Of a stretch of DNA of 64,000 nt, positions 16,132-24,464 are shown in pieces. Numbering within the stretch: position 1 is the stretch's first letter; every line of letters starts with the position of its first letter. Both the position numbers and the translations under genes were made by a program. Under the pieces are notes generated by a model that was not told the origin of the DNA, ran no database searches, and saw only the letters and a list, made by a program, of their open reading frames with translations. Source of the DNA: Phallusia mammillata (Eukaryota); contig OZ281500.1 in assembly GCA_965637545.1 (NCBI GenBank), positions 9,486,001-9,550,000 on the forward strand, in the 5' to 3' direction.

Positions 16132-17221
16132 TTATGCAGCCTCTCTGAGCAATTGCTCGGCATCTATAAATAAAACAAACGACAGTGTTAAATTATTCAA
16201 TTAAATGCCTTTCTCCAAATGTTGTGCTATAACACAAAATACTTACTGATGCTGCTGGTTCTGGTGTAAGTGTAAGCGGTGCGAGCAGGTGGGGTGAGCA
16301 TGCACATGAACATGTCATCAGAGAAAACGCACTTGTTCACCTTCTTGCTGAACTCATGGAGCAACTCCTTCACCAACTTGGTGGTAACTTCAACGATGTT
16401 CTTCAAATGGCTAAACATTTCGTTGATCTTGCTCTCCTGGGCCTTGTTCACGGCGACAACCATTTTGATCTTGGATTCTTGGTCGTCATTTACCTTCTTA
16501 ACGGAGACGATGTCCTTGTCCTGTGCAGCGTTCTTCAGGTTGATGGCGGAGATTGCGCGGTCTTGGGAGGCATCCTTGTTTTTCAGGTCGGAGATAGCGC
16601 CATCTTGTCTCGAGTTGACGGATTGCAAGTCGCTGATGCTTCTATCCTGAGCTGCGTTTGTGTCACGAAGTTTGCCCAAGTCGGAATTCTGGGCGTTGTT
16701 TACGCTGTCGATGGATCCCATGCGAGAATCCTGCTTGGAATTATGACTTCTCAAGTTGCTAAGATGACGATCTTGTTCGGCGTTTTTGTTGTTAATGCCA
16801 TTGACGGATGCCTGGAGGGATTCCAACTCTTTTCTAAGAGCGGCGTTCTTGTTTCTCAGATCTCCCATCTGGCTGTTCAAACGGATGTTAACGTAATTTT
16901 GGGCCTTCATGTGAGCTTCCATCTTCTTGGTGCTTGCATCGAAGTTTCGCACCATACCATAAACGGCGCAAGCCTTTCTGTTGATGGCGTAAACGTAGTT
17001 GTAAACGGAGTTGATTCTGGAGTCGCGGTAACTGAAGGCACGACTGACATCACGCTTGTAGCCGTCAAAAGTGCTGCAACGCTGAAAAAACAATTAAATG
17101 TCATTGCATTAAACACATTTGAGATACTATTGCCACAACTTACCACAAGCCAAGCATTGGATGACTCAGGGAGAATCACCATTGCGGCGAAAACGATAGC
17201 AACAACCGAAACAAACTTCAT
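16132..17221 (-). CDS. Secreted coiled-coil protein, paralog A (3 coding exons); family unrecognised
   Basis: Exon 1 17221-17144 encodes signal peptide MKFVSVVAIVFAAMVILPESSNAWLV|gtaagt. Exon 2 17081-16247 encodes RCSTFDGYKRD..., the 14-aa NxxQD repeats and KCVFSDDMFMCML. Exon 3 16163-16132 encodes (N)AEQLLREAA*. Confidence 0.88.
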
Positions 17222-18308
17222 TTTTAGCTTTATTTCTATTTTACTGCAAGAAAATATAACAACGGTTACAACCGCAAATGAATATTTTTTAGATTCTTTG
17301 TATTTTATTAATAGTATTCGTATCATGGAGCTATCCAGCCAAACTGATAACTGAATTACTCCTGGACATGCTCCCGTATTTAACCACAAACTGCAACATG
17401 ATTAGCTTTGAAATGTAACTAAGTTAAAACAACTGTATGATTGTGTTTGTACAAGCATGAGTACTTCCTAACGCAATGGATTCGCCAAAACAGGTTCAGC
17501 ATTATTATGAGAATTCACGTCATAAACCCTTGTTTTTCGGGCCTAATGGTCATTCAAACTTCCGTACGTAAGTTTAACCACTTAAGCTTTTGCATGATTG
17601 CAATGCTAAGTGCCCTTACATTGAAGCTTCCTGTGCTATTATAACAACTCAAAAGTTCACTGGTGGAGAGAAAAATTGCTTTTTTTTCCAAAAATACAGA
17701 ATTTTTCGGAATAACACTAGAATATTTTGTGTTAGAATTATCATTATTAATATTGACAAAGAGTTGTGTTAAATTTATTTGAACACATGCTTTTGTTTAA
17801 AGCTTTTAGGGGTAGGTGTGTTTGTCAAAGCCTTTTCTCATTTGGTGGTTGTTGGCATAGAAAAGTACTTAAATACGTCATCACACACCTGCAAACATGC
17901 ATTAAGTGCTCTGGTGAACGTGAGTGATAGTTTGCGTTTGCTTTTGTGCAATTTATTAAAATAACCACCTGACGGCAATGTTACTCTTTTCAAACAGCTC
18001 TGCAAATTTTCCATGCCTGGTGCAAATAAAAAAATTGAAAATTTCCAAAACCTGGTGCAGCTGAAAGGGAGGCTGGAGCTCAAAAATATGCAACTATGGA
18101 TGCAACTTATGTAATTAGCGAAAAAGCCTGAGCAAAGACAGCAACAAAACGAGTACGCACAAAAAACAGCAATACACAGGGAATCAGAGGATTTTTTAAC
18201 CACATGTAAAAATATGCGAACATCAAATATTTCTACAAACTATAACTACAACCAAAAAATAAAGTTTCAAGTTCAGATTCAGAGTCGTTGGGAAGCCGTA
18301 GGAATAAT

Positions 18309-19693
18309 TTACTCACTTGCTCGGGCAAGCAATTGCAGGGCACCTAAAAATAAAACAAATTTGTTAAAAAAATGAAAAACATCTTTGGACACGTGTGTTA
18401 ACATGGCGTAACAAACACAACGCCAAAATTGTTTTTTATTGGAATTTACTTACTGAGGGTGCTAGCTCTTGTGTATGTGTAGACAGGACGAGGCGGTGGT
18501 GTCAGCATGCACATGAACATGTTCTCGGAAAACACGCACTTGTTCACCTTGTCAGTAAACTCTTGAAGCAATTGCCTTACCAGAGTGGGAATAGACTCGG
18601 CAAGAACCTTCAACTGGTTAAATGCTTGTGTCATCGAGGTGTCTTGTGCTTGATTCACTGCAACGATATCTCGGATTCTCGCCTCGTGGTCATCATCAAC
18701 CTTCCTCACGTCGCTGATGTCGTTGTCTTGTGCCGCGTTCTTGGCGTTTATGCCGGAGATTACGTTGTCCTGGGAAGCATCCTTGCTAACAAGGTTGGAA
18801 ATATCACCGCCTTGTCTGGTGTTGACAGATTTCAAGTCGTTAATGCTGTTGTCCTGCGCAGCGTTAACTGAGCGAAGTTGGGCCAATTCCGAGTTCTGTG
18901 CGTTATTAACACCATCGATTGCATTCATGCGGGAGTCTTGGGCACTGTTGTGATTCTTTACCGTTCCAATTTGGTTGTCCTGGGCGGCGTTCTTGCTGTT
19001 GATCGAGTTGAAAGCTGACAACAGGTTTGCCAACTCATTCCTCAAACCCGCGTTCTTGTTGCTCAGATCCTTAATTTGACTGTTCAATTTCGAATTTACG
19101 TTGTTCTGACTGTTAATGAAGTTCTGCATGATTGTGGTGCTGGTACTGAGGGTTTTTACCTTGTTGTAAACGGCGCATGCTTTTCTGTTGACAGCAGATG
19201 CGTAGCTCTGGATGGCGGCGATTTTTATGTCACGGTAGTGGAAGGAATTACTGACGACCCTTTTGTAGCTGTCGAAGGTGCTGCAACGCTAAAAACACAA
19301 ATTTGTGGTAACGCATAATCTTGGTTTTTGTTTGTTGGTAAATCTTATATTTGAAAATCATATAAACAAAACACAACCACGTAAGTGTCTGTAGATTAAT
19401 GAGTTTAGTAAAAATTGCTAATGAGATTCGGAATAATTGTAAACTGTAAGGTGATATTTTATACTTTTAAAGTTTTCTTGTAACTATGTTTTTTATGACT
19501 TTTTTTTAAATCCCTAAAAATATAAGCTATATCTACGTTAAAAATACATAATAATTTATTGTAAATTTATGCTCTATAATTTGAAAGGATCCTAATTTAC
19601 TGTAATACATACCACAGCAAGCCAAGCATTTGACGATTCAGGAAGAATCACCATTGCGGCGAAAGCAACAACGACTATGGAAAAAACTTTCAT
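18309..19693 (-). CDS. Secreted coiled-coil protein, paralog B (3 coding exons)
   Basis: Exon 1 19693-19613 MKVFSIVVVAFAAMVILPESSNAWLAV|gtatgt. Exon 2 19288-18454 is 835 nt, the same length as in A. Exon 3 18343-18309 encodes (S)ALQLLARASE*. Confidence 0.88.
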
Positions 19694-20332
19694 GTTTTTG
19701 TTTAATTTCTATTATCCTAAAAAACAAAACAGGTCAATGCACATCGCTTGTTACAATTTGATCAATTTCATAACTCAATGCACACTTTAGCTAACTACCA
19801 CATACCGTTTACGGCAATTTCAAACTGATGTGTAACCCCAAAACCAAGTCCTATTTATTTTATACATCTACAGTGTAAAAGAAGGATTGTCATAACACAC
19901 GATAAACTGTAAATTTAATACGCTCTATTAGGATCCTTGCGTTGGTTTGAAGTAGTGATTACAGTTGTGTACTGCACCCTTGCCGTTCTCGATTGTTAGC
20001 AACCACCTAACACCGGATAATGACGATTACGTGGAATGCAGCAAGCAAAAACAACAGCTTAAAAATAGAACCACAAAAACACCGTGTTTGTTCAGACAGA
20101 AAACAATAACTTATAGCACAGCAAAATAAATATGCATTTGTAAAAATTCTCTACGCACTGAACAGGAGTTAAACTATCTGAAATGGTATTTTAAAAAAGA
20201 TTATTCATTCAATTTTCGGGCCAAAACAACAAGTTGCCTAGCTTTTCTCTTTTGGATTATGTTTGCGCTAAAACCACACCATTTTCCGTCAACGGGAAAC
20301 CTTATCCATGCAATAAGTGCACTTGCAATCGT

Positions 20333-20547
20333 CAGTGGCTCTTCACATGGATTTTTTAAGCAGGAAATCGATCGTTCTGGAGATCATTGTCACAACACAC
20401 ATGCATAAGTGTTTTTTGAACTTGTTCACGCTCTTGTGGATCACTGTCATTACTTACATAAAAGCAAAATAAAGAGAACACGCCCCTTCCGTAGCAAAGA
20501 AAAAAGAGTTGACAAATAAATCGGATTGCAAGTGCAGTAAACATGCA
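20333..20547 (+). promoter_or_regulatory. Conserved upstream block of paralog C, shared with paralog D (22713-22941)
   Basis: Colinear conserved motifs upstream of both genes: cagtggctcttcac, aagcaggaaat, catgcataag, acgcccc, gtagcaaagaaaaa, ataaatcgg, acatgca. Confidence 0.6.
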
Positions 20548-20738
20548 TTAGAACGCTGCAAAGCTCTGTTGATATGTATTTAAATGTTCCATTTTTGTCT
20601 AATCTAAGATATGCCACCAATGAATATATAGACACGAAAGTGGTTCGTAACGGGTATTAAATTTTTTTGATAAAATGTTTGTTTGCAGTTACAAAATAAA
20701 AACAATTTATGTTTTTGGAACAGTAACTAAGCAAAAAC

Positions 20739-21748
20739 ATGAAGTTTATTTCTGTTGTGTTGGTTGTGCTCGCTGCATCAATGGTTCTGCCAGAAGCTTC
20801 TGGGTTCTTGCTGGTAAGTTGATTTCGTTTTTGTTAGACCCTACTACACATAATCAATCTTCTTTCTTTTATAACCGGAAAATTCAATGTTGTGTAACGA
20901 CTAAAAAATTACAGGGCATGGTAAAATGTTTTTTTTTTCTTTTTCAGCGTTGCAACACTTTTGACAATTACAGAGGCGACGTGAGCCGCGCTTTCACTTA
21001 CCGCGACGTTAAGATCTACGCAATGCAGAATTATGTTGCCGCTGTTGATAGAAAAATCTGCGCTGTTTACAACGTAGTGAAGAGCTTCAACACCGCCCAC
21101 GCCAAGATGCAGGCCTACATAAAGACACAGTCCTCCATCAACGCTCAACTCGCACGTGATATTTCTAACCTCTACAATGAAAATAAGGAGCTTGAAGCGC
21201 TGGTGGCTAGGATCCGAAACGCAGTTGCTGCTGCACAGAAAAAAAACAACGACCAAGATAGCCAGATAAATTCCCTCAAGGCCTATAACTCCAAACAGGA
21301 CTCGCGTCTCGCTGGACAAGAAAATGTCAATGCCGACCAACAGAATCAAATCAGTGCGATTCGAAGTGCTAATTCCGCCCAAGAAAGTCGCTTAAGTGAT
21401 GTTAGAAGTGCTAACAAGAGGCAAGACGACAGTTTCAACATGCTTAGGTCCAAAAATAATGCCCAAGATGGTGCTTTGGACGCCAATATTGCTAAGAACG
21501 CCGAACAAGATAATGCAATCAGTCACGCCAACGATCGCAATGCCGCCCAGAACGCCGCTCTTGAAAAGATCGTGAGTGAAAATGAGGAGCAAGCAAAGAA
21601 GATTAAGACCATCCAGACAACCATTGACAACATGAGGCAGTTTACCACCGATCTTGTCAATAAGATGCTTGATGAGTTCTCCGCTACGATGCACAAGAGT
21701 GTTTTCGCAAAAGATATGTTCCTCGTCATGCTCAACTCCTACATTTAA
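20739..21748 (+). CDS. Secreted coiled-coil protein, paralog C (2 coding exons)
   Basis: Exon 1 20739-20813 MKFISVVLVVLAASMVLPEASGFLL|gtaagt. Exon 2 20948-21748 RCNTFDNYRGD...MFLVMLNSYI*. Confidence 0.9.
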
Positions 21749-22712
21749 ACTGGACCGGAACAGCTTCACTGGATCACCGGATTTGCCAAATTATTTTTCT
21801 ATTTTGCTTCTAGCGTTTGAATCTGCAAAAGCGTTTCACGAAAATAAGCTGGGTGAGGTGGTGGAAAATGTATCGAAAATAAAAGATCGCATGCATCTGT
21901 GCGCAAGCGTTAACCTCGGGAATGGAATCAATCCGTTAAAAAAATAAAACGATTTCAATTGGTAGTCAATAATGGTTGTGCATTTTTAAGTTCAGGTTAT
22001 TTCAAAGTTGACTTTAGCACAACAGCTTTGAATTTACAGTGCAAAACCAGATGCGTTAAACACGTGTTATAGCTAAATCTTTATCCTATAAAATGCGGTA
22101 AGGTCGCACCACAGAAACTCACTGCGTTATTTGCTTTAAAAATCTTTCAGTTATTTTTTGAAAACATGACACGAGTTCAAATCAAGCATATTTTATATAT
22201 ATGCAGGCACTGCTTTGTTTGGGCTCATGTTTAGCAGAAAATTTTGTCAACATATCTAGTATCAAAATAACACGACAAAACTTGTGTAAGTTCATAAAAC
22301 CTCAAAGCGGCACACATACGTATATGTTAAATCAAACTCTGTTATTTTAATCCTTTATTAAACTATCCATTATAATTATTTGCTGCCGTAGCCATGCAGT
22401 TCTTGGGTGATACAAACAAGTTTCTTTATTGCAGGAACCGGATAAGGCCACTTTACAAAACGTTGTGTTTATTTAGAACAAAAACTAAACTTACAATGAA
22501 ACAAAGCAAATTCATTTTTGAACAGCACTTTCAAGTACAACAGGAGAAGACATTCCCAAAAGCATTTTTTTCCAAAAAAAAAATAATTCGATTTTTGATC
22601 AAAAACAAACACTTTACCATGCTTTTCTCTTTGGAGGTTTGTTTGTACAAAACCACGCATTGTACGTCAGTGGTAAACCTAACCACAATGCATTAAGAGC
22701 TCTTGTAAGCTT

Positions 22713-22941
22713 CAGTGGCTCTTCACTTGAGTTTGCTAAGCAGGAAATGAAATTAGTTGTTTTTTGTACTGGTACGTTGGCATAACACTCATGCATAAGC
22801 GTTCTAGCAACTTGCTTTTCACGCACTTGTGCAACACTGTCGTCAATGAAATGAAAACAAAGCCAAACGAATACGCCCCTATTGTAGCAAAGAAAAAGGG
22901 AAATGAAGCATAAATCGGTTGGTCAGTGCGTTGGACATGCA
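22713..22941 (+). promoter_or_regulatory. Conserved upstream block of paralog D
   Basis: Same ordered motifs as 20333-20547. Confidence 0.6.
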
Positions 22942-23135
22942 CTAGGAGGGCAGAAAGCCCGCTAGTAGCGTTGACATATTTTATTTCGTTTAACATATAA
23001 GTGAGCAATAAACATTAATATGAATGTGGTCCAACCGAATTTTGTATTTTTATTGATAAAAATTTCTGTTGCACAGATTTGTGCCTAAGTAAAACAAAAC
23101 TGTTTTCTGTTCAGAAAAGAAACTAAGCAAGAAAC

Positions 23136-24182
23136 ATGAAGTTGATTTCTGTTGTGGCGTTTGTGCTGGCTGCATCAATGATTCTGCCGGAAGCCTCCGG
23201 GTACTACTTGGTAAGTTGATTTTCGTTTCATTTATTGGACTGCATATACCATCCATTTTCTCACGTTTTTTTCTGACAATCGCTGGTATGTGTTTATGCG
23301 TTAGTTGACAAATTACAAACCATGCATCGATAATAGGGGAAACCATTTTTAACAAGGTCACTTAACGTTTATTACTTTCAGCGTTGCAGCACTTTTGACG
23401 GTTACAAACGCGATGTGAGCCGTGCCTTCAGTTACCGCGACTCGAGAATCAACTCAATGAATAGTTACGCTGCAGCCATCAACAGGAAAGTTTGCGCTGT
23501 CTACACCATTGTGAGAAACTTCAACAGCGCCCACGTCAAGATGGAGGCCGCAATCAAAAAGCAGTCCTCCATCAACGCTCAACTTGCACGTGACATTTCT
23601 TACCTTTACAATGAAAACAAGGAGCTTGAAGCGCTGGTGGCTAAGATCCGCATCGGAGTTGCTTCTGCACAGAAAAAGAACAACGACCAAGATGCCCAAA
23701 TAAATTCTCTCAAGTCTCACAACTCCAAGCAGGACTCGCGTCTCGCTGGACAAGAAAATGTCAATGCCGACCAACAGAATCAAATCAGTTCTATTCGAAG
23801 TGTCAATTCCGCCCAAGAAAGTCGCTTAAGTGATGTTAGAAGTGTTAACAAGAGGCAAGACGACAGTTTCAATATGCTTAGATCCAAAAATAATGCCCAA
23901 GATGGTGCTTTGGATGCCAATATTGCTAGAAATGCCGAACAGGATAAGGCCATCAACCACGCCAACAATCGCAATGCCGCCCAGAACGCTGCTCTTGAAA
24001 AGATCGTGAGTGAAAATGAGGAGCAAGCAAAGAAGATTAAGACCATCCAGACAACCATTGACAACATGAGGCAACTGACCATCAATCTTGTCAACAAGTT
24101 GCTTGCTGAGTTCTCCTCTACGATGCACAAGAGTGTTTTTGCAAAAGATATGTTCCTCGTTATGCTCAACTCCTACATTTAA
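23136..24182 (+). CDS. Secreted coiled-coil protein, paralog D (2 coding exons)
   Basis: Exon 1 23136-23210 MKLISVVAFVLAASMILPEASGYYL|gtaagt. Exon 2 23382-24182 RCSTFDGYKRD...MFLVMLNSYI*. Confidence 0.9.
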
Positions 24183-24464
24183 ACTGGACCGGAACAGCTT
24201 CACTGGATCACCGGATTTGCCAAATTATTTTTCATTTTTGCCTCTAGCGGTTAAATAACAACAGAGTTTAATGGGAAAACTAGGGTGTGGTGGCGGAAAG
24301 TGTGTCGATAATAAAAGCGCAAATATATCTGTGCACAAGCGTTAGCCTAAGGAATGTAACCTTCAGACTTCGAAATAAATACAAACCTGCCAAATCGCTG
24401 TCAACGTGTGTGTATTTTTGTGAGATTTCAGAGGGTGACTTAAAGTCCTAAACAACCACATAAT

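What the first reader, a model, noticed from the sequence alone, without database searches (positions are those of the whole stretch)
16132..24182. Mirror-image four-gene cluster of secreted fibre-like proteins with a 2x2 combination of head and stalk types
Seen in sequence: the order is A<- B<- ->C ->D. The signal-peptide exon, stalk, C-terminus and exon number group A+B against C+D. The first ~55 mature residues group differently: the outer genes A and D are identical over the first 25 residues (RCSTFDGYKRDVSRAFSYRDSRINS) despite at least six synonymous differences. Two-state sites 22 (R/K), 25 (S/A), 33 (I/V), 45 (R/K) and 55 (E/Q) all split A+D from B+C. My counts over positions 1-60: A-D 44/60 identical, C-D 36/60, B-C 32/60, A-B 30/60. 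Beyond position 60, C-D is about 90% identical. The B-C link is therefore weaker than the A-D link. Inference: a tandem pair duplicated in inverted orientation, and later homogenisation within each pair spared the Cys-bearing head. Two head types would then be kept by selection on two stalk types, which suggests a combinatorial secreted system (heteromeric fibre, adhesive/matrix or recognition protein). I recognise no described family for it.
Basis: partly seen in the sequence, partly recalled or inferred. Interest (0 to 1): 0.85.

Follow-up and report, generated by a model that had tools for sequence, protein, structure and literature searches.

The report
Four secreted polar-core coiled-coil rod genes

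Summary
RNA contigs show B spliced as modelled and D expressed.

The products have no globular head. AlphaFold gives one helix over residues 2-252, with an unbroken heptad register from Cys2. Nine NxxQD polar core layers (N@a, Q@d, D@e) sit 14 residues apart. This motif is described for the phage P22 tail needle, where it holds Ca2+ in a trimer, and for bacterial trimeric autotransporter adhesins.

Of the 18 best-150 hits I read in an exhaustive search of 1.8 billion proteins, 16 were prokaryote- or phage-like fibres that match the stalk only. Only one other organism, carrying two paralogs, has full-length relatives.

The A-D head link is real at replacement sites. Silent sites in the same 180 nt follow the stalk tree, and A-D silent divergence is no lower than A-B or C-D. 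Outgroups suggest the A/D state is ancestral.

So I read the mosaic as selection on exposed N-terminal residues plus a C-D conversion tract over stalk and proximal 3'UTR. Mirror duplication with two head lineages is not supported. Tree tests rest on 60 codons.

The parts
16132..17221 (-). Gene A. Exon 1 17221-17144 (signal peptide), exon 2 17081-16247 (whole mature rod), exon 3 16163-16132 (10 C-terminal residues plus stop).
   Evidence: Sequence reading and motif location. GT..AG introns. Not seen in the RNA contigs of X1, which is no proof of silence.
16434..16784 (-). NxxQD array of gene A. Nine polar core layers (N or D at a, Q at d, D/E/N at e) at residues 100, 114, ... 212, alternating with hydrophobic layers.
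   Evidence: Heptad table. The motif is described in PMC13580157 and PMC2373917. Stalk-only matches to phage/TAA fibres.
18309..19693 (-). Gene B. Exon 1 19693-19613, exon 2 19288-18454, exon 3 18343-18309.
   Evidence: The exon2-exon3 junction is present in an RNA contig of X1 at 100% identity: it skips 110 nt with GT..AG on the minus strand.
19694..20738 (.). Intergenic region of 1,045 bp between the start codons of the divergently transcribed B and C genes. A shared or bidirectional control region is possible.
   Evidence: Coordinates. The function is inferred only.
20739..21748 (+). Gene C. Exon 1 20739-20813, exon 2 20948-21748 (the stop codon is in exon 2; there is no third exon).
23136..24182 (+). 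Gene D. Exon 1 23136-23210, exon 2 23382-24182.
   Evidence: X1 RNA contigs cross-laid on the A head and C stalk carry D's exon-1 end and D's 3'UTR as loose ends. This shows a spliced D mRNA.
21128..21805 (+). C-side copy of the C-D homogenised tract (stalk, tail and first 57 nt of 3'UTR). The D-side copy is 23562-24239.
   Evidence: 92% (coding) and 96% (3'UTR) identity, against 74% in the head, 59% in intron 1, 67% upstream and 75% in the 3' flank. Silent codon differences 20/177 against 10/34.
20193..20738 (+). Upstream block of C that is duplicated upstream of D (22575-23135) at 67% identity.
   Evidence: Self-BLASTN and pairwise alignment. It shows that C/D arose as a tandem duplication of the whole unit.
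16902..17081 (-). The matching stretches are B 19109-19288, C 20948-21127 and D 23382-23561.
   Evidence: Site patterns, dN/dS, tree tests and simulations.

Best explanation
The cluster encodes four paralogs of a lineage-restricted family of secreted fibrous proteins.

Protein:
- After signal-peptide cleavage, each chain is one continuous helix of about 250 residues (roughly 37 nm), in unbroken heptad register from Cys2, which sits at an a position.
- Residues 100-216 carry nine NxxQD polar core layers, each alternating with a hydrophobic layer.
- By analogy with the phage P22 tail needle and with trimeric autotransporter stalks, the rods are most likely parallel trimers. The stacked N@a/Q@d layers would hold ions on the axis: Ca2+ in P22, and Ca2+ is abundant in sea water.
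- The chains are probably cross-linked through the N-terminal cysteines into an extracellular fibre or matrix.

History:
- One gene duplicated in inverted orientation into an AB type and a CD type. These differ in signal peptide, C-terminal Cys pair and third exon. Each type then duplicated in tandem.
- C and D were later homogenised by gene conversion from about codon 60 to 57 nt past the stop codon.
- The first ~55 residues follow the same genealogy at silent sites. At the protein level, the outer genes A and D kept the ancestral residues under strong purifying selection (dN = 0 over 25 codons). The inner genes B and C changed at the same ten positions, which are mostly exposed (b/c/f), five times to the same residue.

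Shown: gene structures, expression of B and D, helix and register, motif array, site patterns, and the C-D divergence breakpoint.
Inferred: trimer, ion binding, cross-linking, the conversion, and selection as the cause of the A-D match.
For: Gene models and gapless alignment.

RNA: contigs with the B splice junction and a spliced D transcript.

Structure: AlphaFold2 gives a single helix over residues 2-252, mean pLDDT 80.

Register: N at a and Q at d every 14 residues from 100 to 212 in all four genes.

Motif in the literature:
- In P22 gp26 and in a GCN4 variant the motif forms a trimer, with Ca2+ bound by the six N/Q oxygens and D@e holding the Q side chains (PMC13580157).
- It is listed as a core pattern of trimeric autotransporter adhesins (PMC2373917).

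Similarity to prokaryotic fibres:
- The profile search gave 552 hits. Of the 18 best-150 hits read, 16 are phage- or bacterium-like fibres matching the stalk only.
- B against a protein from a phage-like contig: 40% identity over 101 residues.

Head:
- pS is A-D 0.45, C-D 0.31, A-B 0.52 over codons 1-25, and dN(A-D) = 0.
- Silent codon differences in the head: A-D 16/43, A-B 10/29, C-D 10/34.
- Third positions and all nucleotides favour AB|CD; amino acids and codon positions 1+2 favour AD|BC.
- Each class rejects the other's tree in parametric simulation.
- B and C changed at the same sites more often than expected (10 observed, 5.4 expected, p=0.003).
- Outgroup states match A/D at sites 22, 24, 25 and 33.

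C-D tract.
Against: - The head holds only 60 codons.
- AU tests reject neither AB|CD nor AD|BC for it (p=0.20-0.33). The parametric (SOWH-type) tests I ran are known to be liberal.
- Silent sites are close to saturation, so an old mirror duplication cannot be strictly excluded.
- Silent divergence between types is lower in the head than in the stalk (55/134 against 171/270, p=3e-5). My account does not explain this. It could mean old head-limited homogenisation among all four genes, or constraint on silent sites near the splice acceptor.
- Trimeric state, ion binding and disulfide cross-links were not tested. The cited paper notes that NxxQD in the core is generally disfavoured and that its peptides were unfolded in solution.
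- Tissue and material are unknown.
Confidence: 0.5

Rival explanations
1. A tandem pair (head types X and Y) was duplicated as a mirror image, so A and D (X) and B and C (Y) are the true relatives. Later gene conversion within each pair homogenised everything except the first ~55 codons. Two head types are kept on two stalk types as a 2x2 combinatorial system.
For: - The gene order fits a mirror image.
- Amino acids and codon positions 1+2 of the head favour AD|BC, beyond what the AB|CD tree produced in 200 simulations.
- With outgroups added, ((A,D),(B,C)) is still the best head tree.
- C-D homogenisation of the stalk is supported.
Against: - Third positions and all nucleotides of the same 180 nt favour AB|CD and reject AD|BC in simulation.
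- A-D silent divergence is not lower than A-B or C-D.
- B-C identity (31/55) is no higher than A-B or A-C.
- At four of the five codons with a shared B/C residue, B and C differ at the third position.
- No A-D or B-C similarity exists in introns or flanks.
- A-B shows no homogenised tract.
- The model needs separate conversions on both sides of the head in both pairs.
Confidence: 0.2
2. A short ectopic gene conversion between the outer genes A and D (about 75-140 nt at the start of exon 2) copied one head onto the other. The seven silent differences accumulated afterwards.
For: - A sharp breakpoint in D's affinity lies near nt 137-142 (27 A-like against 18 C-like sites on the left, 15 against 284 on the right; 0 of 2000 permutations).
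- A-D nucleotide identity is 91% over nt 1-75.
- The BLASTN match between A and D ends within 6 nt of the intron.
Against: - In codons 1-25 the silent divergence of A-D (pS 0.45, 7/25 codons) is not lower than that of C-D (0.31, 3/16) and is similar to A-B and A-C. A conversion young enough to explain 25/25 identity should stand out at silent sites.
- Third-position sites in nt 1-110 are split evenly between D=A and D=C (my count from the site lists and the codon table).
- The genes lie 6 kb apart in inverted orientation, with B and C between them.
Confidence: 0.15
3. The similarity of the stalk to phage and bacterial fibres is convergent. A single polar-plus-hydrophobic double heptad arose in an animal coiled-coil gene and was amplified internally. 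The family has nothing to do with prokaryotic fibres. This rival concerns origin only and is compatible with the best explanation.
For: - The N-terminal 60 and C-terminal 40 residues have no prokaryotic match (best stretches lie within about 26-240).
- The genes have animal signal-peptide exons, and the intron position is conserved in the other organism.
- There are no DNA-level tandem repeats, so the array is old.
- The shared positions are mostly the structural ones.
Against: - Identity extends to non-core positions: V at g before N, small residues at b and c, S before I, D before L.
- The N@a register is rare among natural NxxQD occurrences (PMC13580157).
- The whole mature protein lies in one exon.
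- The family was found in only one other organism among 15 billion proteins.
Confidence: 0.6

Closest known systems
NxxQD polar-core trimeric coiled coils: phage P22 tail needle gp26 (PDB 2POH/3C9I) and stalks of trimeric autotransporter adhesins
   Same: - Same motif in the same register (N at a, Q at d, D at e), flanked by hydrophobic layers.
- In P22 and in a designed GCN4 variant it forms a trimer with Ca2+ on the axis (PMC13580157).
- It is listed as a TAA core pattern (PMC2373917).
- A YadA-anchored protein with KKNETQDNRLDGID repeats is among the hits.
   Different: - The ascidian proteins are animal secreted proteins with introns and signal peptides.
- They lack a YadA anchor, a phage N-terminal domain and a receptor-binding tip.
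- They carry nine motifs in strict 14-residue spacing, whereas P22 gp26 was cited for a single site.
- The direct sequence match of a phage-type repeat stretch (P0010) to gp26 is weak (E=0.03).
Phage tail-fibre proteins with 14-residue (V/I)E(T/N)KNTxQDxRL(T/D) repeats (uncurated; hits P0002, P0010, P0018, P0019, P0049)
   Same: Same period of 14 and the same N..QD..[IL]..[LIV] pattern. 40% identity over 101 residues to gene B. P0049 lies on a contig with phage-like gene order.
   Different: - The phage proteins are 300-2,500 residues long, with globular N- and C-terminal domains.
- No similarity outside the repeat array.
- No Pfam or PHROG family covers the repeat.
Dreissenid mussel byssus thread precursors tpf1 (PMC10691215)
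   Same: Secreted, Asn-rich coiled coils of an aquatic invertebrate that form an extracellular fibre. They are predicted trimers or tetramers, were proposed to be acquired horizontally, and have no other metazoan relatives.
   Different: tpf1 proteins are 354-467 kDa, intronless and 19-20% Asn. The ascidian proteins are about 30 kDa, 11-14% Asn, and have a separate signal-peptide exon. Sequence relationship was not tested because no tpf1 sequence was at hand.
Heteromeric disulfide-knotted coiled-coil proteins of animals (fibrinogen, laminin) and the four-gene coiled-coil silk clusters of bees and ants (from my own knowledge, not tested)
   Same: Paralogous secreted coiled-coil chains encoded by clustered genes, with terminal cysteines and possible co-assembly.
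   Different: Only sub-threshold coiled-coil matches to Fib_alpha or ANG-1. No fibrinogen-related globular domain. The composition is not Ala-rich like bee silk. Heteromer formation was not shown here.

Membership tests
NxxQD polar-core coiled coil (P22 gp26 / TAA stalk type) | NxxQD motif with N at a, Q at d and D at e of a continuous heptad repeat | tested here: met
   The register is unbroken from residue 2. There are 5 strict and 7-9 loose motifs per chain, at residues 100-212 spaced by 14.
NxxQD polar-core coiled coil (P22 gp26 / TAA stalk type) | Parallel trimer | not testable with these tools
   Only a monomer could be modelled. The trimer is inferred from PMC13580157 and from the trimeric nature of phage fibres and TAAs.
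NxxQD polar-core coiled coil (P22 gp26 / TAA stalk type) | Axial ion (Ca2+) held by the N and Q side chains | not testable with these tools
   Known from crystal structures cited. It needs biophysics or a structure of the ascidian rods.
Trimeric autotransporter adhesin | C-terminal YadA-like membrane anchor | tested here: not met
   Pfam scan of all four products found no YadA_anchor. The bacterial hit P0084 has one.
Phage tail fibre / tail needle | Phage genomic context and phage N-terminal attachment or C-terminal receptor-binding domains | tested here: not met
   The genes have spliceosomal introns and signal peptides and are spliced in RNA. PHROGs gave only weak matches (best E=0.00066 to an unknown-function family) for A and none for D or P0007.
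Fibrinogen / angiopoietin-like coiled-coil proteins | Pfam Fib_alpha or ANG-1 above threshold, plus a C-terminal fibrinogen-related domain | tested here: not met
   Fib_alpha 15.3 bits (cut-off 29.9) and ANG-1 16.7 bits (cut-off 28.5). There is no globular C-terminal domain.
Gene-conversion mosaic within a tandem pair (C-D) | A contiguous tract of low silent and non-coding divergence bounded by more diverged flanks | tested here: met
   Stalk silent differences 20/177 and proximal 3'UTR 96% identity, against head 10/34, intron 59%, upstream 67% and 3' flank 75%.
Mirror (inverted) duplication of a two-gene unit | A-D and B-C are closest relatives at neutral sites or in flanking non-coding DNA | tested here: not met
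   There is no non-coding A-D or B-C similarity, and silent sites favour AB|CD. Power is limited by near-saturation.

The most novel reading that the evidence does not exclude
An ancestor of these tunicates acquired a phage or bacterial NxxQD fibre stalk by horizontal transfer and gave it a signal-peptide exon. It now secretes trimeric rods that fold and assemble only when they meet the calcium of sea water. This would be an animal extracellular material built on a prokaryotic ion-zipped coiled coil. Paralogs that differ on the exposed N-terminal surface (A/D against B and C) would set how rods dock to each other or to a partner.
Probability: 0.2. Interest if true: 0.8.

Novelty: new variant of a known kind. 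Interest (0 to 1): 0.5.

Why it matters
The NxxQD core motif was characterised recently as an ion-binding but energetically disfavoured feature. It is known from a phage needle and from bacterial adhesins (PMC13580157). An animal family with nine such layers in perfect register, secreted into sea water, would be a natural test case for ion-dependent folding of polar-core coiled coils. It is also a candidate for a second horizontally derived extracellular material in tunicates, after cellulose synthase.

The cluster gives a clean small example of silent and replacement sites of the same 180 nt supporting different trees. That pattern separates selection from recombination as the cause of a mosaic. 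The 2x2 combinatorial reading that made the finding look exceptional is weakened.

Tried and rejected
- Word-based homolog search with A's long exon found nothing.
- With a six-sequence profile it found only the other organism's paralog.
- A JGI metagenome scan found nothing.
- The PDB sequence search gave only generic coiled coils. A phage repeat stretch hit P22 gp26 weakly.
- Pfam and PHROGs gave nothing above threshold.
- Literature searches found no ascidian protein of this kind.
- Six-taxon tree tests of whether the AB and CD types predate the species split were inconclusive. Signal-peptide and C-terminal characters do suggest it.
- I first read the 92% stalk identity against ~70% flanks as plain proof of conversion. 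That was too quick, because the stalk's silent divergence (pS 0.22) is close to the flank divergence (0.25-0.33). The case now rests on head-versus-stalk silent sites and the 96% proximal 3'UTR.
- Positive selection on the head: no ω above 1.
- Fold search was not run, because a single long helix gives meaningless matches.
- Pseudogenes or contamination were rejected: intact frames, introns and spliced RNA.

Full report
**What is there**

The region holds four paralogous genes in the order A(-) B(-) C(+) D(+). I located exon borders by reading the sequence and matching motifs.
- A: 17221-17144, 17081-16247, 16163-16132.
- B: 19693-19613, 19288-18454, 18343-18309.
- C: 20739-20813, 20948-21748.
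- D: 23136-23210, 23382-24182.

Exon 1 encodes a 25-27-residue signal peptide. It ends in SSNAWL(A)V in A/B and in EASG plus three residues in C/D. A phase-0 intron follows. One long exon then encodes the whole mature protein. A and B add 10-11 residues from a small third exon.

Earlier scan notes call the genome a sea squirt. I did not test this.

tblastn finds only these four copies in the window.

RNA contigs of run X1 carry the B exon2-exon3 junction at 100% identity. They also carry a D transcript, whose exon-1 end and 3'UTR appear as loose ends when it is laid on the A head and C stalk. So B and D are expressed and spliced as modelled. A and C were not seen, which proves nothing with contigs.

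The 263 mature residues align without a gap.
- Positions 1-60: A-D 44/60, C-D 36/60, B-C 32/60, A-B 30/60.
- A and D are 25/25 identical, with seven nucleotide differences, all synonymous.
- Sites 22, 25, 33, 45 and 55 split AD|BC. Sites 28 and 30 split AC|BD.
- Beyond position 60: C-D 182/203, A-B 121/203, cross pairs about 70/203.

**What the proteins are**

Pfam gives only sub-threshold coiled-coil matches. The PDB sequence search gives nothing specific.

AlphaFold2, run on a six-sequence alignment, predicts one uninterrupted helix from residue 2 to 252 (mean pLDDT 80). There is therefore no globular head.

The heptad register is unbroken from Cys2, which sits at an a position. From residue 100 to 212, every second heptad is a polar layer with N at a, Q at d and D/E/N at e. 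These alternate with I/L/M at a and L/I/V at d. There are nine such layers in all four genes, at identical positions.

This is the NxxQD motif.
- PMC13580157 describes it from the phage P22 tail needle gp26. There, and in a GCN4 variant, it forms a trimer in which six N/Q oxygens hold a Ca2+ ion and D@e holds the Q side chains.
- The same paper reports that the N@a register accounts for under 4% of natural NxxQD occurrences within predicted coiled coils.
- daTAA lists NxxQD among the polar core patterns of trimeric autotransporter adhesins (PMC2373917).

**Relatives**

An exhaustive profile search of 1.84 billion representative proteins gave 552 hits.
- I read 18 of the best 150. Sixteen look like phage or bacterial fibres with 14-residue KNTxQDxRL-type repeats, and they match the stalk only.
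- One has a YadA anchor. One lies on a phage-like contig.
- Gene B is 40% identical to that protein over 101 residues.
- The other two are full-length relatives, with the N-terminal Cys segment and the C-terminal segment. Together with P0153 they represent two genes found in one metagenome sample (ERZ27241789) and one sequencing run (SRR5248323). These are L001, and L002 = L004.
- These genes share the intron position one codon before the Cys.
- L004 has a CD-like signal peptide (ending PKASGLLL) and no C-terminal Cys pair. L001 has an AB-like candidate signal peptide and the Cys pair.
- This suggests the AB and CD types are older than the split between the two organisms. Tree tests cannot settle it.

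**The mosaic: C against D**

C and D are a tandem duplication of the whole unit, since 546 bp upstream are 67% identical. Identity along the pair is as follows:

| Segment | C-D identity |
|---|---|
| Upstream | 67% |
| Exon 1 | 83% |
| Intron 1 | 59% |
| First 180 nt of exon 2 | 74% |
| Stalk and tail | 92% |
| First 57 nt of 3'UTR | 96% |
| Further 3' flank | 75% |

Among codons with identical residues, 20/177 differ in the stalk against 10/34 in the head (p=0.013), and 7/18 in codons 26-60 (p=0.005).

I read this as a conversion tract from about codon 60 to about 57 nt past the stop codon. A and B are evenly 55-75% identical and show no such tract.

**The mosaic: A against D**

The protein-level signal is real.
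- D's affinity switches near nt 137-142: 27 A-like against 18 C-like sites on the left, and 15 against 284 on the right. None of 2000 permutations reached the observed value.
- Amino acids and codon positions 1+2 favour AD|BC.
- The observed likelihood gain was never reached in 200 alignments simulated under the AB|CD tree.

The silent sites disagree.
- Over codons 1-25, pS is 0.45 for A-D, 0.31 for C-D and 0.52 for A-B, while dN(A-D) is 0.
- Silent codon differences in the head are A-D 16/43, A-B 10/29 and C-D 10/34.
- Third positions and all nucleotides favour AB|CD. AD|BC is rejected in simulation (about 0.01, and 0 of 200).

AU tests reject neither tree (p 0.20-0.33), and the simulation tests are liberal. 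The conflict between replacement and silent sites in the same 180 nt is nonetheless what selection predicts, and not what ancestry or recombination predicts.

Further points:
- B and C are not alike overall (31/55 identical).
- At the 44 positions where A = D, B and C both differ at ten (5.4 expected, p=0.003), five times with the same conservative residue.
- Those ten positions (7, 17, 21, 22, 24, 25, 33, 45, 46, 55) are mostly b, c and f positions. That places them on the outside of the coiled coil (register).
- The two outgroup genes carry the A/D state at sites 22, 24, 25 and 33 more often than the B/C state.

So A and D most likely keep the ancestral exposed surface under strong constraint, while B and C have diverged on that surface.

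**Unexplained**

Silent divergence between the two types is lower in the head than in the stalk (55/134 against 171/270, p=3e-5). It is lowest in the first 25 codons. The cause could be old head-limited homogenisation among all four genes, or constraint on silent sites next to the splice acceptor. I could not tell which.

**Mechanism proposed**

I propose secreted parallel trimers with axial ion sites every 2.1 nm. They would be cross-linked through Cys2 (position a), Cys38 (position b) and, in A/B, the C-terminal Cys pair, to form an extracellular fibre or matrix. The conserved N-terminal surface would be a docking site.

Strict co-linearity of all polar layers across paralogs that are only 35% identical is compatible with heteromers. 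So is the presence of B and D in one RNA sample. Neither shows that heteromers form. Trimer, ion binding and the material formed are all inferred.

**Origin**

Horizontal transfer from a phage or bacterium is possible.
- For: a single exon for the mature protein, a patchy distribution, and mainly prokaryote- or phage-like stalk matches among the hits read.
- Against: the similarity is confined to the repeat, and the array is old at the DNA level (no tandem repeats).

A comparable case of a horizontally acquired Asn-rich coiled-coil fibre is reported for dreissenid mussels (PMC10691215).

Joined spliced models were not searched or folded.

Noticed in passing
window 21749-21805 and 24183-24239: The first 57 nt of the 3'UTRs of C and D are 96% identical, while the next 120 nt are 75% identical. 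This is either the end of the conversion tract or a conserved 3'UTR element.
   Followed up: partly
L004:9071-9145 and L001:6076-6160: In the other organism, the gene on L004 has a signal-peptide exon ending PKASGLLL|GTAAGT, very like C/D. L001 has a candidate exon 3.7 kb upstream with an A/B-like ending (ANALWG). The two types may predate the split between the two organisms.
   Followed up: partly
window exon 2 of all four genes, mature residues 9-10: A dibasic K-R follows an aromatic residue at mature positions 8-10 in A, B, D and both outgroup genes (C has R-G). It is a possible convertase site that would remove the first ten residues, including Cys2.
   Followed up: no
window 16902-17081, 19109-19288, 20948-21127, 23382-23561: Silent-site divergence between AB-type and CD-type genes is significantly lower in the first 60 codons (41%) than in the stalk (63%), and lowest in the first 25 codons. 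No explanation so far accounts for it.
   Followed up: partly
window 16356-17354 (+), 18395-18871 (+), 20909-21382 (-), 23454-23816 (-): Long antisense ORFs (up to 332 codons) overlap all four genes. They are probably a by-product of the repetitive codon composition of the coiled coil and not genes.
   Followed up: no
window exon 2 of A-D: GC3 of the long exons is 0.55-0.66 and their overall GC is 0.45-0.48, against about 0.39 for the surrounding DNA. This may reflect codon bias of highly expressed genes or a foreign origin.
   Followed up: no
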